64,000 nt of DNA. Source: Laetmonice hystrix (Eukaryota). Of this stretch, positions 11,001 to 52,789 are shown piece by piece. The DNA is taken from positions 9,114,001-9,178,000 of the forward strand of contig OZ249438.1 of the NCBI GenBank assembly GCA_965235115.1. The letters run 5' to 3'. Position numbers and translations under genes: made by a program. The first letter of the stretch is position 1. Each line of letters starts with the position of its first letter. The notes beneath the pieces were generated by a model, which was not told the DNA's origin, searched no databases, and saw nothing but the letters and a program-made list of their open reading frames with translations.

Positions 11001-12669
11001 AAGTGATCTAAACAGTTGGGGGAGGTTTAACCACTGCTAACGTAACCATAGAAACTGCCAAATTCACCCCTCACATTTACTGGCTCACCCTCCTGTAAAT
11101 AACCCCTAACCCCCTTACCCAGAGGTCACATGACAGTGCTTGACACATGGCGGATCATGTGACGTTGGGGTAAGTCGTAAAACGTTAAGCACTTGTAGAT
11201 GTAGTATTTGACAACAGCTTTTCTTACTGTAGCTGCACCTCTCACTTTGTCAGGATTCTGGATAGCGTTTAAGGTACATTGCTTAAATGGCCATTGATAT
11301 ATGTCAGAGGAGAAAAAAAATTCTAATTGTGTGTAATTAAGTGAAAAAAATATATATGTAAATAACAGCTTACAACGGGAAAGGCATAGGAATGGCCATT
11401 TAAACAATATGTTAAAGTTGTTTCATATTTTGAAGAACCGATTAATATAGCCTATTTTAAGACTCAGAATAGAAGAATGTCGGGAAAGCCTGACTGTATA
11501 GATGACCAGTCATGTTGTGCAAGGTTAAAGTGATCAGAGGCTATTTGTAATTTAATAATGTGGTTTACGTTTGGTCGGGTCGAGTAATATAATCAAGCTT
11601 TGTTTATATGAGTACAGTTAAGTCAGGTCAGTGCAATCGCCAACTTCAGTTAAAAACCTACACTCTGGTGTCTAGGGTAAGGTTGATCGTTTAAATGATG
11701 GTGAGGTCCCTTTACCCAAGTTGTAAATTTACGTATTTAAACCAAATATTCAATTTTAAGAAATCAAGTTTCTCCTGTCTTGGGTCTGAGTTAATTTATA
11801 GAATTAGTTGTGTAGTTTTTAACATCATTGTCCGTAAAGTTGCGTGTGTTCGGGTCGAGTACCATAGTGATGATCTGTTGTCCACTGTCAGCTTCAGTTA
11901 CCCTGATAAATCTGACAAGAGGTTGCCTGTCGTCTATCATCAGCTTTAGCTACAAACGGTGGCCCAGAGCGAGCTGCTATGAGGAGTGTATAGCGATGAG
12001 TGTACGCGGTAGTTAGCCACGTGCCTGAGCTCATGCAATCCAGAAAATATCGTCTCTGCTGGTCGTACTGCCACAGTGGAAAACGCGCTGTCATAGCTGT
12101 ACACGTGGCAGACGACCCCCTCCCCTCCCCAGCCGCCTCACTCTCACACATATACATATAGAACCAGGCTCATCCCCTGACTGCTCATCCCGGCATCATG
12201 GTTGACCTTGACCGTGGAAACCATGGCAACCAGGATGGCCACTGACGAGGCATTGGTATTTGTGCATGAAAACATGGCGCTCGAACGCGGCAAGAAGTGC
12301 GTTGCTATGCCAACATAGGAGGAATTCCTAAAGGATGCACTTAGTTACACTTCATCAAACCATGCCAGATAAATCAAAGATCGTGGGATATGAGTTTAGA
12401 GAAGGGGTGTGGGCATTTTACCGGCCTTACTCAGGGTGGGTAGGGGATCGTTCTATGACACTGGCAGCAGTCTATAGGCTATGGTGGAGGTGATGGAAGA
12501 GAATCATAATGGTGAGATGCCGAGAGGAGAAAGCACTGTCTTGATAAACGTTAGCGCATTCATATTGACACATGTAGAAATTTAAAAACTCGCTTGAATG
12601 GAGAATACATGCTTTTGTATTTTCTTCCTCTTTCGCTCCGTTTTTAAGGGAGAGTTGACAGTTCGCAAA

Positions 12670-13255
12670 GCCGGTGTCACATCGAAAACTGACCCCCGTG
12701 GTAAATTGACCCCCGGGTCACTTTTCCACAGTGGAAAAGTGACCCCCTCTGTGGTAATCTGACCCTCAATGAAAAGTTAAGATATGTCTTGTTCTGTATG
12801 TATGGTTTATATTTTATACTTATGGAAAGGATACAAAACATGTTTTTGTTCATGGCGTACTCAATTTGTCAATCTGCTCAATTTGCAAATAACATTCATT
12901 CAAATAGACCTAACCCTAAACTTACCTTAACCCTAACCGAGGGCGTACAGGTAGCACCCGTATCTGCTGGTTTGCCCTTTTAATTTGCCGGGTAAATTTG
13001 GAAATTGACGAATTGCAAACACCCTATTTTCAAATTGTGCATGTCGGCAAAGTGAGTGTACTACAGGCTTAAAAATTGTTGAAATATACTAAGAAGCAGG
13101 AAAATCACGATAGGTTCCAATGTAAAGACGTTATGCCAAATATCTATGTTATTAAACATGGGTCATTTTTCTACAGGAGGGGTCACTTTTCCACTGTGGT
13201 AAAGTGACCCGGGGGTCAACTTTACCACGGGGTCACTTTACCACATCACACCGGC
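12670..13255. mobile_element. MITE-like non-autonomous DNA element with ~95-bp imperfect TIRs (superfamily not assigned)
   Basis: Left gccggtgtcacat..tgacccccgtggtaaattgacccccgggtcacttttccacagtggaaaagtgacccc.. (12670-12765) matches the reverse complement of 13160-13255; no coding capacity; no clear TSD. Confidence 0.85.
12854..13024. mobile_element. Possible small element nested in the MITE, with short imperfect TIRs and a telomere-like CCTAAC core
   Basis: ggcgtactcaatttgtcaat versus revcomp ggtgtttgcaattcgtcaat; internal cctaaccctaaacttaccttaaccctaacc at ~12909-12938. Confidence 0.4.
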
Positions 13256-13479
13256 ATCTCGATTGTTCTAACATTGCAGGACTATCCCTCCCCTGTGAGG
13301 TGTTGAGGAAAGTCTTCTTCCCAACCTTGAAGCGTTCACATGGTGCAGGGGTTTACAGGTTATAAAGGCTGTCTATAGTATGGGAAGGAAAAAGGGGTTG
13401 TCAACAAAACTTAGTTGCACGCGATTTAGGGGGGAGGTCGAGGCGAGGGGGCACACAGCACTATTCCCTCTGGTTGCAT

Positions 13480-18800: not shown

Positions 18801-19541
18801 GTTAGCTCCTACACCTCCATAGGTTAGAGACAGACGGTCAGAGAACAAAGAGTGCCAGTAGGGTTATGACCCTAACCCTTTTTTTTGAAGGGGTAGGATC
18901 AGAGAGTTGGGGTTGGGAGGCGGTTGTTGACCAGACCGGTGGATAGGTCACCCAGAACGGGTGCTACGGTTCACTCCCATTGTATGGCATAGAATACAAA
19001 GGGCTTGAGTGACCAGTCTTTTATTGCACTGCAATCTGTACATTTATGTACCGGTAGTTATGCTGGTGGGTTCTGGGAACGTTGGTCGCTCAATTTATTA
19101 TTGTATCGGAACACAATAGTTGTGATTTTCTTTGAATTTTCAACAGGAAAACTTTTTGACACTTTAAGTCAATTTCATAAATATTTTGACTAGTTTCCGC
19201 AGGAAACAGGATGGCTTGGTACACAAAAAAGATGAATTCACATTGTTTTAAATGCAGCTATGGGTGTGACTCGTATAAATTAGATACTGAGACCCTAATA
19301 AAACACAAAATAAGGGTCATTCCCAAGCCCGTCATAATAACTCTCATTATGCCATCTATAGGCTGAGCTGAACATGGCACAAAACAAAACATAGGACCAC
19401 AGTGTCGCGGTTTTTTTTACCGATAAACCTGTTGATAAAACACCCGTGATCTTATGGCAGATACATATGGAAACCATTGATTTATTTGCACTTCAACCGT
19501 TGCCCTGGAAAAAAAAATCAGATATCCTGAAATATTCCTGA

Positions 19542-19838
19542 AAATGTCTTGGAAAGCTCCCATGAAACCCTTATAAATATCTTGGAAAGCTCCCATGAAA
19601 CCCTTATAAATGTCTTGGAAAGCTCCCATGAAACCCTTATAAATATCTTGGAAAGCTCCCATGAAACCCCTATAAATGTCTTGGAAAGCTCCCATGAAAC
19701 CCTTATAAATATCTTGGAAAGCTCCCATGAAACCCTTATAAATGTCATGGAAAGCTTCCATGAAACCCTTATAAATATCTTGGAAAGCTCCCATGAAACC
19801 CTTATAAATGTCTTGGAAAGCTCCCATGAAACCCTTAT
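19542..19838. repeat. 33-bp minisatellite tcttggaaagctcccatgaaacccttataaat(a/g), ~9 copies
   Basis: 33-nt period; ends ~45 nt upstream of the exon A acceptor; explains the ORFs at 19417-19923. Confidence 0.97.
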
Positions 19839-19883
19839 TTTGACCCCCAGTTTATATGATTATTTGCATTGTGTGTGTTACAG

Positions 19884-20048
19884 TCGACGGAGAGTGACCT
19901 TTCGTACGACTCGGACGACCTGATCCAGACCAAAGTATCGTTTGCCGAGTTCATCCAGCAGTACAAGGAGCTCACCGATTGGCTCAACCAGATCCAGCTC
20001 GTCACCCGACGTCAGAGCTCCAGTCTCTCGGAGAAATACCTCAACCAG
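19884..20048 (+). CDS. Internal exon A (165 nt, phase 0/0) of a spectrin-repeat protein, klarsicht/AKAP6-like; STESDLSYDSDDLIQTKVSFAEFIQQYKELTDWLNQIQLVTRRQSSSLSEKYLNQ
   Basis: Acceptor tgtgtgttacag| and donor CAG|GTCAGT; C/G-ending codon bias; spectrin helix A pattern (F..Y.EL.DWL..I); joins in frame to exon B. Confidence 0.9.
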
Positions 20049-21600
20049 GTCAGTCTGGCACTGTATGGAATCACTGCTGGTCAGCGGACAAAGTCGTGGG
20101 AAAGGAAACAGATCAATCTGGACCTGTTTTCTGATTTCCTGTAAGAGCCCTGTAGTGTGGCTCTGAGTAGGTACAGGTTAACAAACAAAAAACAGGACAG
20201 TGGGGTTATTTAATATGGCTTGAGCTGTCCAAAATAAATAAACAGGTAAAAAGGGATGACTCGTACTTGAAATTGATATATTTGATATATTTTAACTGCA
20301 AGCATTATCGGTAAATACCGTTGAAAATTTTTACATGGGAATCGATCAATATTTGATTTTCGTTTGATCTACGATTTGTGACCTTAAATATTTATTTCTC
20401 CCCATTTTGTGACCATCCGCCCAAGAGTTAAGACATAAATCACTACATGATACGAGTTGAGAGCAGAGCCCCAGTGTCGTGTGACCAGCCCGTGAGATTT
20501 CTGTGATATGACTGACAACCCCTGGTCTACCTAACCCCCGTACACTTGTTTATATACCGGTGGGGTATCTCAAGACCACTCAAACCCCAACATTAGACAC
20601 CCCACGGGAGGGCTGAGATCTGACACCCGGGGATTTGTTAGCACCCTCGGTGGGGTGCGCAAAACGCCCTCTTTTATACCCGTACATGGGTCACAATGAA
20701 TCGGACTTACCGTGCAAAGGTTTTATACCGACATTCGCTATGGAGTCTTACGAAGAACTATTTATTGGTGGAAAGTAAGATTTTTAAACATTTGGCGATG
20801 GAAAAGATTAAACGGGAATAAGAGAGCAAAATAAAGAAACATGTATAAATCTGTTTATTTTTAAGTGATACTTACTCTGGTGTATCTTAATCACAATCTC
20901 AAAATGCAAACATAAAGGTTAACTGTTATAAGTTGAAGTACGATTATCAGGATATTTACGGTAACAATTTCTGATACACTGTTACACTGACTGATAGCAA
21001 ACTTTCCACAAAACATCCCTTCACACCTGCCTGGTAGTGGGGGGTATCTTGACTGACAGGAAAGTTATGGGGGGGGGGGGGGGGTGAATCTCTCTTCACC
21101 GCACGATGACGGCGGGCCTGGAGAGCCTTAAAATGGAGATTTTGTGGGTGGAAGTTCCAGTTCGCAGTCATTTGAATTGTCTGGCTAAGAAGATGGTAAT
21201 ATGAAATGAGAGTTTATTAAACTCTTCAGGACTGCATATGTGTAGAAGTTAACAGATCGGGAGTAACCCCAAGGAAGCTAAGGACCCCCAAGGACGACCA
21301 ATATGGACAGAGCAATAAGTCCAGGACGGGGACCTACAATGGGAATGGTTCATTAAATGAGATATAATCGAGGGGGGAGGGTTACTGGTGGTCCGGTACA
21401 GTCCACCTTGAGCCCCAGCCCGTAAAATTATGCGGTTTTGGGGTGTATAAGTGAAAAATGCTGGTTATAACGCTTAATATCCAATTGAGGATGCTGCTAT
21501 TTCGTCTTTATGGCGTTCGAAGAAAAAATATAGGGGAGAGGAGAGATAGTAAATAAACTAAGAAACTTGAAAACTTGCCCCATTCTACTTAAATATGTGG

Positions 21601-21650
21601 TGTTTGACTGCTTTGGTTGTATTTGTACCCTCAGACGTACCATGAGGAGA
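21601..21650 (+). other. Diverged direct duplicate of the exon B acceptor plus the first 16 exonic nt (decoy 3' splice site)
   Basis: ttggttgtatttgtaccctcag|acgtaccatgaggaga versus the real ttggttgtgtttacaccccccag|acctaccatgaggaga; AG at 21633-21634, 336 nt upstream of the real site. Confidence 0.85.
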
Positions 21651-21655
21651 CCATG

Positions 21656-21959
21656 GTGTTTGTCTGACTGTGTTGGTTGTGTTTGTCTGACTATGTTGGT
21701 TGTGTTTGTCTGACTGTGTTGGTTGTGTTTGTCTGACTGTTGGTTGTGTTTGTCTGTGTGTGTTGGTTGTGTTTGTCTGACTGTGTTGGTTGGTGTTTGT
21801 CTGACTGTGTTGGTTGTGTTTGTCTGACTGTGTTGGTTGTGTTTGTCTGACTGTGTTGGTTGTGTTTGTCTGACTGTGTTGGTTGTGTTTGTCTGACTGT
21901 GTTGGTTGTGTTTGTCTGACCGTGTTGGTTGTGTTTGTCTGACTGTGTTGGTTGTGTTT
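21656..21959. repeat. 23-bp UG-rich minisatellite tgtgtttgtctgactgtgttggt, ~13 copies, abutting the exon B acceptor
   Basis: 23-nt period with small indels; no AG dinucleotide between 21650 and 21968. Confidence 0.97.
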
Positions 21960-21970
21960 ACACCCCCCAG

Positions 21971-22169
21971 ACCTACCATGAGGAGATGCTGCGCCGCTCC
22001 CCGCGCCGTAAGGTGTTTAACGACTACGCCAAACAGTTGATGAGGAGGTACCCGAGCATGAAGGATGAGATCAACCTCCGACTCCAGCATCTCAACCGGC
22101 AGTGGCAGACCGTGGAGAAGGCCATCTCTCCACGGCAGGGTTACCAGGACGAGGCCACCATGCTCAGAG
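21971..22169 (+). CDS. Internal exon B (199 nt, phase 0/1); TYHEEMLRRSPRRKVFNDYAKQLMRRYPSMKDEINLRLQHLNRQWQTVEKAISPRQGYQDEATMLR
   Basis: Acceptor tacaccccccag|, branch-like CTGAC with A at 21942, donor AGAG|GTAGGC; spectrin helix B/C pattern (I..RL..LN.QW..V); the final G joins AT of exon C to give Asp. Confidence 0.9.
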
Positions 22170-23633
22170 GTAGGCCACATTGTCACCGGATAGGGGATGG
22201 GAGCAGGGGACAGTTTTATGTGTTTACCTTGAAAGTGAATAATGAATTAAATCATTCTTGGCAAGGATTACCGGTTAAAGCAACGAGACGTCTCGTTGGT
22301 TAAAGGGAAGAATGAAAATTATCCACAACTGAAAAGACCACCAGAAACCCTCACAAACAGCAAAACTATAACTCCCCCCCCCCCCAAAAAAAAGCCAGTC
22401 GTTGGCCTGATGTTTCTAAATACGATGATAAAGGATTTAGTAGAGGAACCATAAAATTCAGATATATTTCACGGTTCCATTTGGTGTTTAGGGCGTGAAA
22501 ATGTAATTTTTTAGGGGTATGAATTTATCGGGAGAATTTATCAAGGAAAGCTTCATGAAGTACAATCGACAAGTCACTTGGTCGGTAAGGTTCCCATTCC
22601 CCAAGGTCTGAGATGTAGATCGAGGTTGATTATTATGTTAAGAGGATCATGCTATGAATGTGAAGACCTCGATACTTGACGGGAAGTAACCTTCCCGGTG
22701 AAGTGGGATGTGTTTTCACTGCCGGCTTACGGCTAGTATTGGGTGTCTGGTGACACACGCTGTAATCCTATGTAATCATTGGCTCGGTATTAGCTCAGCT
22801 CCTCCCGTTTTCTGGGTCAAGTACGCCGCTGTTGACTTGTTTATAATGGATCAGTGCGCTGTTTATAGTCGGAAAGTGGGTGTTTGGCGCGGGTTTTTTA
22901 TATTCCGACATGGTGCCGTGTGTTTGTGTGACTACCGACCGTCTCGTGTATAACAGTCGAGAGATGAGACCATTTAAATGATCGTGCCAATCAGGGCAAA
23001 GCGTCGTCGTTCTATGGTGTCATGATACGGCGAGGAGTGGAGAAGTGGGAGTTCATAAATAGGAGATATTTTCCGTCGTTGGTATGCATGGGTTTATTCA
23101 TAAGGACCCCAGGGCAACCGGTACTCCCTCGGAAACGTCCTTCTTACACGAAAATGGAAGAAAAGAAGGGAACAGAAATTAGAATAAAGGAAAAGACTTC
23201 AAAAATAAATACTTGAGACGAATTGGTCTCAGCATTTGAATATGGAGGGATCGCAAAGTATGCCAGTATTTTATAAATCGCCAACGGCATGGTTGGCAAA
23301 CTGAGAAATATTTTAAAAGGCAGAAAGCAGGAGTTGTGTAGGTGAGCCGAGGATGTTGTGATTCATGTACACCACAGGAGGTATTGAAACATACATACAA
23401 AGTCACCGCAGGCTATAGAATGTCGGACCTGGAATTGGCAATCTCTTAGGTGCAATTTAGCTTACTCACATGGTGTGCAACATACTTGGCATCATGTGTG
23501 TAACTTCGGTGCTCCGAGGTGTAAATGTGTAAGGCATAACCTCAGTGAAGTTGACGGAAGTTTGTAAGATGAAGTGTGAAAACTGTGTGGGAAATTCTGA
23601 GTCAGGAAAAGAAGGAAGTATGTTCCAATCACT

Positions 23634-23770
23634 GAGCCACACTACAGGGCTCTTACAGGAAACCAGAAAACAGGTCCAGATTGTTCTGTTCCCTTTCCCA
23701 CGACTTTGTCCGCTGACCAGCAGTGATTCCATACAGTGCCAGACTGACCTGGTTGAGGTATTTCTCCGAG
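23634..23770 (-). repeat. 137-bp inverted duplicate of 20027-20163 (last 22 nt of exon A, its donor, and 115 nt of intron)
   Basis: Reverse complement aligns without gaps, with 3 mismatches (at 20106, 20113, 20134); sharp boundaries; no TSD. Confidence 0.95.
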
Positions 23771-25027
23771 TGTTTGAAATACAGGGTGAGTTTGAGCGGT
23801 CAAAGGTTTGAGGGTTTTGGCGTGTGCGGATGAATAGGAAAACCCAAGATATCAGGGCCTTTGGTTTCAAAGTCACACCTGGAATTTTTCTTTTTCTGAA
23901 AATCGAGTACGCTTTCTAAAATAAACTTAGTCGAGATTCAGCCGAAAGCCTTGCTCACTGATCGTGTCATTTGGAGAAGACTGTTTACAACCCGCCAGAT
24001 GGCGTTCCGGTGTGGAGTGGTTGGGTGCCTGGAACGTTTCACTCTCGACTTTCGGCGGCGCACCTCCATGCCTGCTGTGTCAGGAGTTGGCAGAGTCTTG
24101 GCAAGGGGGTACGGCCGGACGTCCTTGGGCACACTCACCCCCTAAAACTATAGAGGAAAGTTAGGGTTGTTGTTGCAAGCCCGGTCCTGTCGTAAGTGCA
24201 TTGGGCCCAAGGCCCAGCGTGGACTCGGTGAAGTAGAAAGTACAGTGGTGGTCCATTGCCAAACAGGGACCACCTTGCAGTGGTAGATGAGGGAAAGATG
24301 AGATCGACGAAAAGCTTTTAATTTCAAAATGTCAAAACATACAATATTGTATATTAGAACCAGATGTTTGCTGTTGTGCTCCTTATTAGGCCTATGTTTT
24401 GTTGACATCCATCTTTGAAAATCATGTGTATAAGCTTGTTAGAGAATTTACGAAAGTGAAGGGAAAAGGGTTTTATGACATAAAAATTGTAGCATGCATT
24501 CTTATGACTGGAAATCAGAACACTGCATGCTCTGTCGACACTCTAAACACTCTAAACACTCAAATGGACTTGGATAACATTGTTTCGGCAGACGATAGTA
24601 CTGCCGCCTGGTGGGCGATATTATTACCAAAAAACCTTATTTGCGGAACCGCCATCTGGTGTGAAGGACCCGGAAATACATTGTACGGTGGCCGTAACAA
24701 ACTCTCCAGGCGCTGTTTCATTCCCAATTAACCTGGTCTCTTTTGACCAGGAAGTCCAGGCGCGTGTCGGGGAGTTGGTTGACTGCCACATGGGCGACCC
24801 CCCCCCCCCACTTGCGACAAATCCTGCACTGTATACGGGCCTGATTTCATTATGATTTCATTATCTATAGACCTATTAAGCACGATAATTTATGAAGTAC
24901 AATGAGACTTATCGCAAGGTTTATAACAGGCCCATTGGGAAGGGAGATAGACCAAATGATTCCTAGCTGAGTCCCTGTGTAAGATAATTAGACTTAACGA
25001 AATGTGGCCGTTTTCTCGTATGTATAG

Positions 25028-25152
25028 ATCTGGCGGAGGACCTGAACGGTTTGAAGACGTGGCTCCATGACGTCGAGAGTCGTCTGCTGCCGCTCTGTGT
25101 GCGCGCCAACTGGACCAAACCGGAACTCGAGGCCAAACTCAAGGATCACCAG
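25028..25152 (+). CDS. Internal exon C (125 nt, phase 1/0); (D)LAEDLNGLKTWLHDVESRLLPLCVRANWTKPELEAKLKDHQ
   Basis: Acceptor ttttctcgtatgtatag|, donor CAG|GTGAGT; spectrin helix A (L..WL..VE..L); phase matches exon B. Absent from the ORF track because it is short and lacks a start codon. Confidence 0.9.
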
Positions 25153-25511
25153 GTGAGTACTGACGTCCGGCGGTAAACTACGGAACTACTGGTACACCCG
25201 TGGTGGTTTTTGTCAATCAACTCTGTTGGCCCACAGATGTCGCTGGCAAACACAGCCGCATACGCCCCCTGGAGTGTGGGAGATGTACCGCTCCCGACTG
25301 CCTTCAAGGAGCCTTACTGAAAACATTGTAGTTCCAGTTTGTGTACAGATGATGAATTTCTTTCAGGTGAAAGGGAAGAGTGACTTTGTGATTATGACTG
25401 AATCCAGCGGATATTCAGTAGTTGGGTTCGATGTCTACTCCTTCGTTTAGATTTTGATTTTGGCAAGGATATGAAGGGTGCCAGGTAACCTATTGTGTGC
25501 GTTGGGAACAC

Positions 25512-32958: not shown

Positions 32959-33513
32959 AATGCACTGAGCGACCCCTTGGACGACCGTATGAAGTGACCA
33001 TCCAGATGGCACGGTCTGAGGGCGGCAAATAGTCTTTGATCCGCTTTGTCTGCCGCCTGCTCCCTCTGAGGTCCTTGTTTGTTCTCCGCCAGCAGAGGAC
33101 TTTCGGAATGACATGTCGTGTGACCAAGAGAAGGGGGGAGGGGGTCAATGACTGGCCTTACGGTGGCTAAGTCATGTTATCCTTTTATAGTACAAACTGT
33201 TTTTATAAATTATGACCTTTAACTACTGTGGGTATTACTTAAAATCCGAGATAAGGAATTACTTACGACCGCATCTCCCTTCATGGATCTTACTTCGTCT
33301 GGAAAGCCGTATGGGGGGGGGGGGCACTTGCACCCTAGAAAAGCGGGAAAAACTGCCCTTTCTTAGGTCCCCTAAGTACCCTTTTGTACCCCATACTGCC
33401 CCGTTGCAATTTTGGTAGAGTATGACCTTGCAGAACCACGGCTTGCTCCATGAATTTAAAGGTCCCTGTGGGCAGTATGCGTGTTTTACCCTCCGCGTAG
33501 GCCTGGAATACGT

Positions 33514-34402
33514 GGTGAAGGTGGATTGTGGAGCTGTGCGTACAGGTGGATGTCGGGAGGGAGTGGGGAGACTGAAGGATTGAGAATGCTGACCGGGCTC
33601 GATGGTCTGTCCGGTGAAGGTGGATTGTGGAGCTGTGCGTACAGGTGGATGTCGGGAGGGAGTGGGGAGACTGAAGGATTGAGAATGCTGACCGGGCTCG
33701 ATGGTCTGTCCGGTGAAGGTGGATTGTGGAGCTGTGCGTACAGGTGGATGTCGGGAGGGAGTGGGGAGACTGAAGGATTGAGAATGCTGACCGGGCTCGA
33801 TGGTCTGTCTGGTGAAGGTGGATTGTGGAGCTGTGCGTACAGGTGGATGTCGGGAGGGAGTGGGGAGACTGAAGGATTGAGAATGCTGACCGGGCTCGAT
33901 GGTCTGTCCGGTGAAGGTGGATTGTGGAGCTGTGCGTACAGGTGGATGTCGGGAGGGAGTGGGGAGACTGAAGGATTGAGAATGCTGACCGGGCTCGATG
34001 GTCTGTCCGGTGAAGGTGGATTGTGGAGCTGTGCGTACAGGTGGATGTCGGGAGGGAGTGGGGAGACTGAAGGATTGAGAATGCTGACCGGGCTCGATGG
34101 TCTGTCTGGTGAAGGTGGATTGTGGAGCTGTGCGTACAGGTGGATGTCGGGAGGGAGTGGGGAGACTGAAGGATTGAGAATGCTGACCGGGCTCGATGGT
34201 CTGTCCGGTGAAGGTGGATTGTGGAGCTGTGCGTACAGGTGGATGTCGGGAGGGAGTGGGGAGACTGAAGGATTGAGAATGCTGACCGGGCTCGATGGTC
34301 TGTCCGGTGAAGGTGGATTGTGGAGCTGTGCGTACAGGTGGATGTCGGGAGGGAGTGGGGAGACTGAAGTTTTGAGAATGCTGACCGGGGGCGATGGTTT
34401 GT
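33514..34402. repeat. 99-bp minisatellite, ~9 near-identical copies
   Basis: ccggtgaagg at 33611, 33710 and onward; source of the 359-aa and 388-aa ORFs. Confidence 0.97.
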
Positions 34403-35080
34403 CGTATCGTGTTCAGACGCATCATGTCAACAAGAGTCTGGGCCGCCGGGCAGGGTTCTATTCTCAGGCTAATATTAACATTGGTTGGTGCTGTTGTAGC
34501 ATGTCAGCTTGCCAGGCCAGAGAAAGCGGCAAGGCGTTATGTTTAAAAAAAATTCCATGATTATATCGCTTACCATCTTGTTCCCCGTCATGGAAACGAT
34601 CATGTTTTATTTTTCAGGCGGAGAGGATATTAAGGGTTGAACCTTTGGCCTAGTTTATGAGTACACATCAATAAGATGTATAGATCCTGATATTGGACAG
34701 ATATTGGATTATCCTAGCCGGTTGGAATAATCCAGTTATACTGTCGACTGACCCTCAACTCAGTCCATTCAAGTCGAGTCAGTCGGCTCAAACACGACAA
34801 GATTTGTCTTTCACCTCATTCCTACCTGAGGAGGTCACGTGACTCGCCGTTACCCTGTTCTCTGGGGGTACATGTTGATGGGTTACTAGGGTAACCAGAA
34901 ATGATGATTCTGGACAGGGTGGTGGGGTGGTGGTGTAGGGGGTGAGGGTGAGATTCTGACAGTTCCCCTTGGGGATCCTCAGCAGCCAAGTGATGAGAAT
35001 TCATCAGGAGAACCTTCTAGGTCCCTTCTCGGTCTTTTCTTCGGTCAGCCAGTCTTCATATCAGCGAGGCCATAATTTGG

Positions 35081-48787: not shown

Positions 48788-49062
48788 TGAGCTACGTCCA
48801 TGATTCAATCATCATGGGGTAGTCGGGAGGTCGTGTATATTTAGACTTTGGCCTTACCTTTCAACTTAACAGATTGTATGTAAGTGAAAAAATCTATAAA
48901 TTGAGTAGTAAGTACGTGTATTCATGTTAACCAGATGGGGTTACCGTTAGCATAGTTTTCTAAGAAACTTTATGACTTGCAAATACATGGACATTTGGTG
49001 ACGCGGTATCGTTTCGTGTACCAAGGTAAACAAAGTTTCTGCCAGAGTCTGGTCTAGCCAAA

Positions 49063-50770
49063 TGGCCGACACACCAGTGGGCCATAGACCCAACCCATTG
49101 TCAGGTACACAGGTAACTCTAGTAGACACACCAGTGGGCCATAGACCCAACCCATTGTCAGGTACACAGGTAACTGTGGCAGACACACCAGTGGGCCATA
49201 GACCCAACCCATTGTCAGGTACACAGGTAACTCTGGTAGACACACCAGTGGGCCATAGACCCAACCCATTGTCAGGTACACAGGTAACTCTGGTAGACAC
49301 ACCAGTGGGCCATAGACCCAACCCATTGTCAGGTACACAGGTAACTCTGGTAGACACACCAGTGGGCCATAGACCCAACCCATTGTCAGGTACACAGGTA
49401 ACTCTGGTAGACACACCAGTGGGCCATAGACCCAACCCATTGTCAGGTACACAGGTAACTCTAGTAGACACACCAGTGGGCCATAGACCCAACCCATTGT
49501 CAGGTACACAGGTAACTCTGGTAGACACACCAGTGGGCCATAGACCCAACCCATTGTCAGGTACACAGGTAACTCTAGTAGACACACCAGTGGGCCATAG
49601 ACCCAACCCATTGTCAGGTACACAGGTAACTGTGGCAGACACACCAGTGGGCCATAGACCCAACCCATTGTCAGGTACACAGGTAACTCTGGTAGACACA
49701 CCAGTGGGCCATAGACCCAACCCATTGTCAGGTACACAGGTAACTCTAGTAGACACACCAGTGGGCCATAGACCCAACCCATTGTCAGGTACACAGGTAA
49801 CTGTGGCAGACACACCAGTGGGCCATAGACCCAACCCATTGTCAGGTACACAGGTAACTCTGGTAGACACACCAGTGGGCCATAGACCCAACCCATTGTC
49901 AGGTACACAGGTAACTGTGGCAGACACACCAGTGGGCCATAGACCCAACCCATTGTCAGGTACACAGGTAACTCTGGTAGACACACCAGTGGGCCATAGA
50001 CCCAACCCATTGTCAGGTACACAGGTAACTCTGGTAGACACACCAGTGGGCCATAGACCCAACCCATTGTCAGGTACACAGGTAACTGTGGCAGACACAC
50101 CAGTGGGCCATAGACCCAACCCATTGTCAGGTACACAGGTAACTGTGGTGGACACACCGGTGGGCCATAGACCCAACCCATTGTCAGGTACACAGGTAAC
50201 TCTGGCAGACACACCGGTGGGCCATAGACCTAACCCATTGTCAGGTACACAGGTAACTGGCCGACACACCACGGCCATAGACCCAACCCATTGTCAGGTA
50301 CACAGGTAACTGTGGTGGACACACCAGTGGGCCATAGACCCAACCCATTGTCAGGTACACAGGTAACTGTGGTGGACACACCGGTGGGCCATAGACCCAA
50401 CCCATTGTCAGGTACACAGGTAACTCTGGTAGACACACCAGTGGGCCATAGACCCAACCCATTGTCAGGTACACAGGTAACTCTGGTAGACACACCAGTG
50501 GGCCATAGACCCAACCCATTGTCAGGTACACAGGTAACTCTGGTAGACACACCAGTGGGCCATAGACCCAACCCATTGTCAGGTACACAGGTAACTCTAG
50601 TAGACACACCAGTGGGCCATAGACCCAACCCATTGTCAGGTACACAGGTAACTCTAGTAGACACACCAGTGGGCCATAGACCCAACCCATTGTCAGGTAC
50701 ACAGGTAACTGTGGTGGACACACCAGTGGGCCATAGACCCAACCCATTGTCAGGTACACAGGTAACTGTG
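49063..50770. repeat. 57-bp minisatellite, ~30 copies with a variable 7-nt block
   Basis: gacacaccagtgggccatagacccaacccattgtcaggtacacaggtaac plus tctggta/tctagta/tgtggca/tgtggtg; source of six long ORFs on both strands. Confidence 0.98.
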
Positions 50771-52564
50771 GTGCACACTTGTGATGGTGACATATTCAGA
50801 GATAAGCGGTCTGACGTCACCCATTGTATGTAACACCGAAAGTGTTCCTTGCTGACATATGATAACGGTGATGTTACTATTATTATGAATGTATTAGTAT
50901 TAAAATGACATCTTGTTGTAAAATGGGTTCGAAATAGGACAAAAACAACTTTATTAGTGGGAACTTTTTGTAGTACTTGAGGTGAAGAGGGAGATAATTT
51001 ATCAGGAATAGCGGGGGAGAGTGACCTTTTTATGTTTCACCAAACGTCTGGATCATCTTCTCACTGTCAGTTTACAGCCGAGTCAATATTTTAAACCAAT
51101 ATGTAAACCCTGATGTTGACAGTGAGGTGTAGAGATGGGTCAATATTGGCTGGGGGTACGTGAGTGGCCAAACGAGATACCGGCAAAATAAATCTTGCAC
51201 TTTCAACAGTTGTAGCATGGGACAAAATAAGAGGGGCATGACCAAAGTTAATATTGCACACTCTTCATTGGTAATTTTGGCCGTGTGAGCTAATGTGAAG
51301 TGTGAACTCAAACATTAGTAATATGTTATTTTATTGTTGTATAAGTTAGATGAAACTTGTGCTGCGTGCTTACCCCTCAGTATAACGGTAACTTGTTACC
51401 AAGATACATGACAACGTTGAAGTGGATGAAAACAGATTTCCTGATATACCCGGTAACCTGACCAGTAAGTGCCGCCGTATGATTACCCAATCCATATCAG
51501 GCTTTCAAACACAGGTGGCGAGACTCTGGTGCTGGGGGTTTTGCTATGCCAAGTTTGAACCCCAAGCGATCTAGTCAGCTATATGCACTGAAAGGCCTGG
51601 TGACCGGGGGGGGGGAGGGCGGGAGGGGGGGGGGGGTAAGACTGGATTATAGGAGAGGATCATCTCTGACTATCCATAGAGGATAACATACCTTGTTGGG
51701 AACGATTGTGAGGGCAGGGACCTGTTTACAAAAACCTCCACAGCTTGGCTTGGGCATAGGTCAAGGACCATCGTGGAGCAGTCATATGTCCTGGGTTTTA
51801 TTTATAGAACGTTCTCTTCATATGACAGGTAATCTGCTGGGAGTCACAGCGGAGATAAGCTGTCAGCAAGCTGTGTGATGTGATCGGAGTATTTTATAGA
51901 GAGGACATTGATTTATAGACTTGTGCTTAGAGAGTGGAGTATGACCTAATGGTGACGTCATATAATAACGTATACAATTAAAGGTTTACCATGTAAATCT
52001 ACAGGTGTTATTATTATATGATGAGATTAAAGGGGCGTTGAGAATAAATCAACCGACCTCAAACCAATCAGTAACTCAGTCATGGCAACCATGTTATATG
52101 AATAGATGGATTAATAAGTTTCGGTTTGAATGTTTCCTTACTCCTGACAAGAAACAATAATCTAACATCTTTTAATTCGGTCCGAATTGATTGTTTTGTG
52201 ATTGATTGTGTACAAACCTTGCTAGATGTATAATTGTATACTTTATGTGCTGCCTTTGATTCCATTACGAGTTTCTTTAAGGCAGAATTGTAAATAGATA
52301 CAAAAAAATATGTACCAAATGTATTTATAATCATGATGGTCACGAATTTAAGACGTTTATTCCCATTTAGGTGAATATAGCTTTGCAACCCTTTAACCTT
52401 AACGTTACAAAGTGATTGATAGAACCAAGGGATATGGTTGGTATCCAGGAAGAACCACTGTAATCAGTATGCAAACACCAATATGTTTAATGTTATCTTA
52501 AGTTCTTGACTCCACCGCCGTCTCTTGCTTGCCGTATTCCTCACTCCTGTTCTCTGTTCGGCAG

Positions 52565-52789
52565 GCCTTACAGCGGGACATCGAGTCGCACTCTAAGATC
52601 GTGTCGGCCGTGCTGAAGTTGTGTGAGCACCTACAGAACGACAAGGACGCGTGTTCGTCCCCAGACGAGGGAGAGGAGAAGGATACACTCCAACTGGTGG
52701 CAGTGAACCTCGAGCGGCGCTGGCACTCCATCTGGTTACAGAGTCTCGAGTGGCAGTGTAGACTGGAAGAGGCCATCACCCACGGAAAG
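52565..52789 (+). CDS. Internal exon D (225 nt, phase 0/0); ALQRDIESHSKIVSAVLKLCEHLQNDKDACSSPDEGEEKDTLQLVAVNLERRWHSIWLQSLEWQCRLEEAITHGK
   Basis: Long polypyrimidine tract ending gttcggcag|, donor AAG|GTGAGT. The C-D junction gives KLKDHQ-ALQRDIESH, a typical spectrin helix B. LERRW..WLQSLEWQCRLE resembles my recollection of klarsicht/AKAP6-type repeats (not database-verified). Confidence 0.9.

What the first reader, a model, noticed from the sequence alone, without database searches (positions are those of the whole stretch)
20027..23770. Recent inverted copy of exon A's 3' end and donor site: an ECS-like duplex looping out exon B
Seen in the sequence: 20027-20163 and 23634-23770 are reverse complements over 137 bp with only 3 mismatches, sharp ends, no TSD and no recognisable TE. 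The copied segment is the last 22 coding nt of exon A, its CAG|GTCAGT donor and 115 nt of intron. The 3470-nt loop contains exon B. In pre-mRNA the mismatches would be A20106:C, U20113:U and A20134:C. Established: long exon/intron duplexes with intronic exon-complementary sequences direct ADAR editing (GRIA2 Q/R and R/G sites; the R/G adenosine lies at -2 of a 5' splice site); A:C mismatches are favoured ADAR targets; duplexes can also mask splice sites. Inference: this duplication may have created a new editing or splice-masking switch. Candidate recoded codons are GAG/AAA/TAC/AAC/CAG, including A20047 at donor position -2 (Q to R). It could alternatively promote skipping or circularisation of exon B.
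Basis: partly seen in the sequence, partly recalled or inferred. Interest (0 to 1): 0.72.

Follow-up and report, generated by a model that had tools for sequence, protein, structure and literature searches.

The report
Young inverted copy of an exon end
A 137-base piece spanning the end of one exon and its splice donor was recently copied, upside down, into the next-but-one intron of an invertebrate nuclear-envelope (KASH/spectrin) gene. It is real and would fold into a very strong RNA duplex, but it looks like a young, probably still segregating DNA-repair scar rather than an evolved editing or splicing switch.

Summary
20027-20163 and 23634-23770 are reverse complements (134/137) with sharp ends. 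Arm 1 is the last 22 nt of exon A, the CAG|GTCAGT donor and 115 nt of intron. Exon B lies in the 3470-nt loop.

The segment has exactly two copies in the 627-Mb genome, and both 500-nt flanks of arm 2 are unique, so it is not a transposon. Read-derived contigs of two runs cross arm 2's left junction and carry its three private letters, so an assembly artefact is unlikely.

The gene encodes a lophotrochozoan spectrin-repeat KASH protein. Two related species have exons A and B but no inverted copy. One read contig looks like an allele without arm 2. The codons in the duplex (LSEKYLNQ) are invariant in most relatives.

The pre-mRNA would fold into the duplex (-275 kcal/mol; 134/137 pairs in the global optimum), and the genome has ADAR-type genes. 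No RNA run exists, so editing, donor masking, exon B skipping and circularisation are all untested.

Best reading: a young templated inverted insertion made by template switching during repair or replication, neutral or mildly harmful. It is a nice natural experiment, not a demonstrated switch. An earlier first-reader note of this scan (s1-347155, not followed up) describes a similar inverted exon-plus-intron copy elsewhere in this genome.

The parts
19884..20048 (+). Exon A of a spectrin-repeat KASH-protein gene (55 codons, ends in phase 0 with ...SEKYLNQ)
   Evidence: Translation. tblastn with the Octopus and Tubulanus proteins P0013/P0014. Orthologous exon in L006 and L007.
20027..20163 (+). 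Arm 1, the source: last 22 nt of exon A, the CAG|GTCAGT donor and 115 nt of intron A-B
   Evidence: It is taken as the source because it sits at the conserved exon end that relatives also have.
20049..21970 (+). Intron A-B (1922 nt). Holds the intronic part of arm 1 at its 5' end, and a 23-nt minisatellite with a decoy acceptor at 21598-21970.
21971..22169 (+). Exon B (199 nt, spectrin repeat), enclosed by the two arms. Skipping it shifts the frame and gives TGA after 5 codons in exon C.
   Evidence: Pfam Spectrin E 2.7e-5. 113 homologues. tblastn. Frame read.
23625..23633 (+). Nine letters (CCAATCACT) beside arm 2. The putative empty allele has only AC here. AATCACT(G) also occurs in arm 1 at 20070-20077, so this may be a second short templated filler (weak).
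   Evidence: inference.
23634..23770 (-). Arm 2: the inverted copy of arm 1 (134/137), inserted in intron B-C. It lies 1464 nt after exon B's donor and 1257 nt before exon C.
   Evidence: Junction confirmed in read contigs. Absent from relatives.
25028..25152 (+). Exon C (125 nt)
   Evidence: tblastn; sequence and splice sites; blastn match to L007.
52565..52789 (+). Exon D (225 nt), after a 27-kb intron

Best explanation
Arm 2 is a young templated inverted insertion. During repair of a break or a stalled fork in intron B-C, a 3' end switched to a template 3.5 kb away on the same chromosome. It copied 137 nt across the exon A/intron boundary in the opposite orientation and switched back, leaving a few filler letters. 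It is specific to this lineage and probably still polymorphic. It has most likely not been selected for any function.

Shown: the two-copy structure, the sharp ends, the unique flanks, support from reads and absence from relatives.

Inferred: if both arms are present on one pre-mRNA they pair into a 137-bp duplex. That duplex would be a promiscuous ADAR substrate, mainly in the intronic parts. It would also bring the two introns flanking exon B together, which modestly favours back-splicing or skipping of exon B. These are by-products, neutral to mildly deleterious, and are limited by splicing of intron A-B before arm 2 is transcribed.
For: - **Copy number:** exactly two copies in 627 Mb and unique flanks. 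There is no TSD and no flanking homology, no Rfam family and no protein homologue of the ORF over arm 2.
- **Age:** divergence is 3/137 (2.2%), of the same order as the allelic differences in the same 4 kb (about 48 substitution rows, roughly 1%).
- **Reads:** contigs X1 record 8 and X2 record 16 cross the left junction.
- **Possible empty allele:** the X2 loose end before 23769 aligns 17/20 with 23605-23624, directly beside the insertion (1 in 1000 shuffles reach it). It then runs straight into the right flank, as an allele without the insertion would. Shared AG would give 2-nt microhomology.
- **Relatives:** L006 and L007 have exons A and B but no inverted copy.
- **No older structure:** the intron next to exon A is not conserved in relatives.
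- **Base rate:** in 264 kb sampled here, the only other young inverted repeat is a multicopy TE terminus.
- **Known process:** templated inverted insertions with microhomology that accumulate as germline variants are described in PMC8421209.
- **Folding:** duplex -274.6 kcal/mol. The global optimum of 19884-23850 pairs 134/137 cognate positions, and forbidding long-range pairs costs 191 kcal/mol.
- **ADAR:** ADAR-type domain architecture is present.
Against: - The empty-site allele rests on 30 printed letters of one contig, and contig depths do not fit a simple heterozygote.
- No contig was reported that joins 23633 to 23771 cleanly.
- The template lies 3.5 kb away, whereas the detection tool of the cited study only searches for templates within 100 bp.
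- Microhomology at the left junction is not evident.
- The two relatives are fairly distant (exons 74-83% identical, introns unalignable). They date the copy only loosely.
- Absence of selection is inferred from youth. It was not measured.
Confidence: 0.65

Rival explanations
1. The main real-world effect is on exon B. The arms act like the complementary intronic repeats that flank circularised exons. They loop out exon B and raise back-splicing (a 199-nt circular RNA) and A-C skipping. Skipping is out of frame (TGA after 5 codons), so it lowers productive mRNA on the allele that carries arm 2.
For: The geometry matches. 115 nt of arm 1 lie in the upstream intron and arm 2 in the downstream intron, 1807 and 1464 nt from exon B's splice sites. 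The duplex dominates the predicted fold. The frame consequence is read. It is established knowledge that inverted repeats of 30-40 nt or more in flanking introns are enough to drive circularisation.
Against: There is no RNA data. Arm 1 sits at the extreme 5' end of the upstream intron and includes the donor. Once intron A-B is spliced, which is possible before arm 2 is made, the intronic part is gone. The size of any effect is unknown.
Confidence: 0.15
2. One reading: the copy created an ECS-like element that directs ADAR recoding of exon A codons (for example Q to R at A20047) or masks the exon A donor, working as a new regulatory switch.
For: There is a near-perfect exon/intron duplex with two A:C mismatches. 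ADAR-type genes are present. The GRIA2 Q/R and R/G sites are an established precedent for exon/intron duplexes directing editing.
Against: The copy is absent from relatives and there is a likely empty allele. LSEKYLNQ is invariant or nearly so in relatives, so recoding is expected to be disfavoured. Long perfect duplexes are edited promiscuously, not site-selectively. U1 binding and A-B splicing can precede transcription of arm 2, which lies 3.6 kb downstream. No RNA data exist.
Confidence: 0.07
3. The copy was carried in by a mobile element or by reverse transcription of unspliced pre-mRNA (gene-fragment capture or LINE template switching). A first-reader note suggests this for an inverted SGPL1 exon copy elsewhere in this genome.
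For: An earlier first-reader note (s1-347155) reports a similar exon-plus-intron copy joined to a LINE stub. The copy contains unspliced exon-intron sequence.
Against: Both 500-nt flanks are single-copy. There is no poly-A, TSD or terminal repeat. The ORF over the region has no homologues.
Confidence: 0.05
4. The hairpin is processed by Dicer into endogenous small RNAs that act on the gene's own pre-mRNA.
For: A 137-bp near-perfect duplex is long enough for dicing. Hairpin-derived endo-siRNAs are established in invertebrates.
Against: There are no small-RNA data. Only 22 nt are exonic. The locus is young and single.
Confidence: 0.04
5. Assembly artefact: arm 2 does not exist in the animal.
For: Inverted chimeras occur in long-read data. 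All three runs come from one sample, which may be the assembly's own.
Against: Read-derived contigs from two runs cross the left junction and carry the three private letters. The arm-1 contig breaks where a second copy predicts, and depth about doubles over the shared part. Three mismatches are not what a chimeric read would produce.
Confidence: 0.03

Closest known systems
Templated inverted insertions from template switching (MMBIR/FoSTeS-type MMB-TIs; filler DNA of theta-mediated end joining)
   Same: A short inverted copy of a nearby template on the same chromosome. It has no transposon hallmarks, little or no microhomology and possible extra filler letters, and it occurs as a germline variant (PMC8421209).
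   Different: At 137 nt with a template 3.5 kb away, it is longer and more distant than the events that study's tool was built to find (templates within 100 bp). The mechanism here is inferred from the scar alone.
Intronic exon-complementary sequences of ADAR targets (GRIA2 Q/R and R/G sites)
   Same: An exon end and its donor are paired with a downstream intronic complement, and adenosines lie near the splice site.
   Different: Known ECS duplexes are short, imperfect, conserved over long times and lie in the adjacent intron. This one is 137 bp and near-perfect. It is young and lineage-specific, and it lies one exon further downstream. Editing has not been observed.
Inverted repeat pairs (e.g. 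Alu pairs) flanking circularised exons
   Same: Complementary sequences in the introns on both sides of a single exon, within 2 kb of its splice sites.
   Different: The arms are a unique duplication rather than dispersed repeats. One arm overlaps the upstream exon's donor. No back-splice reads are available.

Membership tests
Templated inverted insertion (template switching in repair or replication) | The insert is an inverted copy of a nearby sequence on the same molecule | tested here: met
   134/137 reverse complement, 3470 nt apart.
Templated inverted insertion (template switching in repair or replication) | Not a mobile element: two copies only, unique flanks, no TSD or terminal repeats | tested here: met
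   Positive control with a TE terminus.
Templated inverted insertion (template switching in repair or replication) | Microhomology at the junctions | tested here: inconclusive
   2 nt (AG) at the right junction, but only if the X2 contig is the empty allele. None is evident at the left junction.
Templated inverted insertion (template switching in repair or replication) | An ancestral empty site exists | tested here: inconclusive
   Relatives lack the copy, but their introns are unalignable. One contig suggests an empty allele.
ECS-directed ADAR editing site | Exon/intron duplex in the pre-mRNA | tested here: met
   Predicted only: -274.6 kcal/mol, and 134/137 pairs in the global optimum.
ECS-directed ADAR editing site | A-to-I changes in RNA against DNA of the same individual | not testable with these tools
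ECS-directed ADAR editing site | The complement and duplex are conserved across species | tested here: not met
   No inverted copy in L006 or L007. The intron next to exon A is not conserved.
ECS-directed ADAR editing site | The organism has ADAR (dsRBD plus deaminase) | tested here: met
   A_deamin matches lie downstream of dsrm matches on the same strand on contigs C5, C21, C18 and C11.
Repeat-driven exon circularisation | Complementary sequences in both introns flanking the exon | tested here: met
   Arm 1's intronic part is at 20049-20163 and arm 2 at 23634-23770, around exon B at 21971-22169.
Repeat-driven exon circularisation | Back-splice junction reads | not testable with these tools
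   No RNA run.
Transposon with terminal inverted repeats (MITE or fold-back) | Multiple dispersed copies, TSD | tested here: not met
   Two copies in the genome, and no TSD.

The most novel reading that the evidence does not exclude
A newborn exon/intron duplex that is still segregating and is caught at birth. On carrier alleles it would be edited by ADAR within codons that are otherwise invariant, or it would switch exon B between linear, skipped and circular forms. That would be a natural before-and-after pair showing how ECS-type editing sites or circRNA-producing introns arise from a single repair scar.
Probability: 0.12. Interest if true: 0.6.

Novelty: new member of a known kind. Interest (0 to 1): 0.3.

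Why it matters
How the intronic complements of ADAR editing sites and the repeat pairs of circular-RNA exons first arise is mostly inferred from old, conserved cases. Here a single, datable mutation has placed a 137-bp perfect complement of an exon end and splice donor one exon downstream, and alleles with and without it may coexist. If so, carriers and non-carriers of one species would give a clean natural test of what such a duplex does to editing, donor use, exon skipping and circularisation. As it stands it is one structural variant without RNA evidence, so its present value is as a test case rather than a discovery.

Tried and rejected
- **Transposon origin:** rejected. There are two copies only and the flanks are unique. 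Rfam found nothing in 19000-25500. The 136-aa ORF over arm 2 has no homologue.
- **Assembly artefact:** made unlikely by read contigs across the left junction.
- **Search for RNA evidence:** the run search returned three runs of one sample, none recorded as RNA. The reads were contigs only, so no editing, splice junction or back-splice could be read.
- **Search for close relatives:** P0001's contig is only 501 nt. Only L006 and L007 could be examined, and their introns do not align with the window.
- **Local fold of arm 1 alone:** not special (z = 0.36). Only the long-range pairing matters.
- **Mismatch pattern:** two transitions and one transversion. This is too few to read any direction or wobble bias.
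- **Literature:** a search for a described origin of an ECS by inverted duplication found nothing specific.
Full report
**1. The observation**

The window holds one strong inverted repeat, 20027-20163 against 23634-23770. It is 137 nt long, 98% complementary, with 3470 nt between the arms. It is the only high-identity inverted repeat of 50 nt or more in the whole 64 kb; the other pair found is 79% complementary. When the arms are aligned with 37 nt of flank on each side, identity begins and ends abruptly at these coordinates. No duplicated target site is visible.

The three differences are A20106/C23691, T20113/T23684 and A20134/C23663.

**2. The gene**

Exon A is 19884-20048. It ends in phase 0 with ...SEKYLNQ and is followed by GTCAGT. 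Exon B is 21971-22169, 199 nt, and matches the Pfam Spectrin repeat at E 2.7e-5.

A full HMMER search with exon B found 113 homologues. The long ones are proteins of 1400-1540 residues. They include Octopus proteins that UniRef names 'KASH domain-containing protein' and an uncharacterised protein of the nemertean Tubulanus polymorphus. Both example proteins end in a KASH-like ...PP(P)x tail.

tblastn with these proteins places four exons in the window:
- exon A, 19884-20048
- exon B, 21971-22169
- exon C, 25028-25152
- exon D, 52565-52789

Arm 1 is therefore the last 22 exonic nt, the donor and 115 intronic nt. Arm 2 lies in intron B-C, 1464 nt after exon B's donor and 1257 nt before exon C. 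Exon annotation rests on homology and splice consensus. No RNA of this species was available.

**3. It is not a mobile element and not an artefact**

- A search of the animal's own 627-Mb assembly finds the 137-mer exactly twice.
- The 500 nt on either side of arm 2 are single-copy.
- As a positive control, the only other young inverted repeat in 264 kb sampled around the window turned out to be a transposon terminus, with more than 1600 candidates in the same kind of search.
- Rfam finds nothing in 19000-25500.
- The ORF that runs over arm 2 has no homologue.
- Read-derived contigs from two runs (X1 record 8, X2 record 16) span 23188-23721. That covers the left junction and all three letters private to arm 2.
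- The arm-1 contig of these runs stops at 20056, exactly k-1 letters into the repeat. Depth roughly doubles over the shared part.

All three runs come from one sample, which may be the assembly's own. This is support at the level of reads, but not from an independent individual.

**4. Age and distribution**

The arms differ at 3 of 137 positions (2.2%). That is of the same order as the differences between the read contigs and the reference in the same 4 kb (about 48 substitution rows plus indels, roughly 1%).

Two related species could be examined on long contigs. These are L006, with exons 74-78% identical in DNA, and L007, at 80-83%. Both have exons A and B, and L007 also has exon C. Neither has an inverted copy of the exon A end anywhere in 14.7 and 20.4 kb. 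In six relatives the protein reads ...LSEKYLNQ (one has Y in place of the final Q), and the read-through into the intron diverges at once. So there was no older conserved structure here, and arm 1 is the source.

One contig of run X2 matches the window from 23769 rightwards and carries 95 other letters before that point. Its last 30 letters align best, within the whole 4-kb stretch, with 23605-23624 (17/20). That is the sequence directly left of the insertion, and 1 in 1000 shuffles reach this score. It reads like a diverged allele in which the left flank runs into the right flank without arm 2 (...TATGTT-AC-AG|TGTTTG...).

Run X3 fits a second haplotype that differs in the arms:
- its arm-1 contig runs unbroken to 20112 with private variants;
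- it shows no depth doubling;
- nothing is laid on 23636-23735.

I treat this as suggestive only. The contig depths do not fit a simple heterozygote, no clean 23633-23771 joint was listed, and holes in contig data prove nothing.

**5. Origin**

The scar has these features:
- an inverted copy of a nearby template;
- sharp ends and no transposon features;
- perhaps 2 nt of microhomology (AG) at one junction;
- a few extra letters (CCAATCACT) at the other. Seven or eight of these recur in arm 1 at 20070-20077.

This fits template switching during break repair or replication. Such events are described as templated insertions linked to MMBIR, which accumulate as germline variants (PMC8421209). The distance to the template (3.5 kb) and the length (137 nt) exceed what that study's tool targets, and the mechanism is inferred from the scar alone.

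A first-reader note of this scan (s1-347155, no follow-up recorded) reports a similar inverted exon-plus-intron copy in another gene of this genome. I did not test that case.

**6. What it would do in RNA**

The two arms pair with -274.6 kcal/mol. In the minimum-free-energy fold of the 3967-nt stretch 19884-23850, 134 of 137 positions pair with their cognate partner. Forbidding pairs that span more than 1500 nt costs 191 kcal/mol. Arm 1 alone has no unusual local fold.

The genome carries ADAR-type genes. Deaminase-domain matches lie downstream of dsRBD matches on the same strand on four contigs. From established knowledge, a long near-perfect duplex is edited promiscuously rather than at one site. 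Complementary sequences in the two introns flanking an exon also favour its back-splicing and skipping.

Skipping exon B (199 nt) shifts the frame and gives TGA after 5 codons in exon C. The duplex can only form if intron A-B (1922 nt) is still unspliced when arm 2, 3.6 kb downstream of the donor, is transcribed.

The codons inside the duplex are invariant in most relatives, so recoding there is more likely to be harmful than adaptive. None of these RNA-level effects could be tested. No RNA run holds the stretch, and contigs cannot show editing or junctions.

**7. Verdict**

Youth, lineage specificity, probable polymorphism and the conservation of the affected codons all make it unlikely.

The best explanation is a young, neutral to mildly deleterious templated insertion. 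Its RNA consequences, if any, are by-products. Exon B circularisation or skipping and intronic hyper-editing are the most plausible of these. It is a new member of a known kind of mutation. Its interest lies in being a possible natural with/without experiment.

Noticed in passing
window 21183-21771: In all three runs a contig joins 21183 to 21771, skipping 587 nt with 9 other letters between (depth 37-57). A reference-like contig also covers 21144-21683. The decoy copy of exon B's acceptor (about 21625-21650) and the first half of the 23-nt minisatellite therefore seem to be missing from one allele. The feature noted as s1-353785 would then be polymorphic too.
   Followed up: partly
L007:9820-9900 (relative), beside exon B at L007:9986-10183: A related species also carries a degenerate copy of exon B's acceptor and first 60 nt or so. 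It lies about 140 nt upstream of the real exon and has a 5-nt gap. Duplication of this acceptor has thus happened in more than one lineage, or it is old.
   Followed up: partly
window 19471-19866: A 33-nt minisatellite of about 12 copies (80-97% alike) ends about 17 nt before exon A's acceptor. It gives long spurious ORFs on both strands.
   Followed up: no
window 23634-23770, + strand: Read in the gene's sense, arm 2 offers a pyrimidine-rich stretch followed by CAG (about 23680-23725) and a GAG|GTATTT donor-like site (about 23755-23762). A short cryptic exon is conceivable. This was not scored and there is no RNA evidence.
   Followed up: no
window 12663-12765 / 13160-13262: A second, older inverted repeat (103 nt, 79% complementary, 394 nt apart), possibly a small TIR element.
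   Followed up: no
window 33260-34560 and 48950-51040: Two long minisatellite arrays give open frames of 360-450 codons on both strands. They lie in the 27-kb intron C-D.
   Followed up: no
L021:1170-1256 / 1778-1864 (G000:C3:9239170...): An 87-nt inverted pair 521 nt apart belongs to a very abundant, very young element. There were 1658 first-look candidates, many at 97-99% identity, on many chromosomes and clustered on C12 around 27.6-27.8 Mb.
   Followed up: partly
G000:C21:15856814-15878401 and G000:C5:28038678-28045845: Two loci each have two dsRBD matches followed by a complete adenosine-deaminase domain in two exons of equal layout, presumably paralogous ADAR genes. Further ADAR or ADAD-like loci lie on C18, C11 and C7.
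   Followed up: partly
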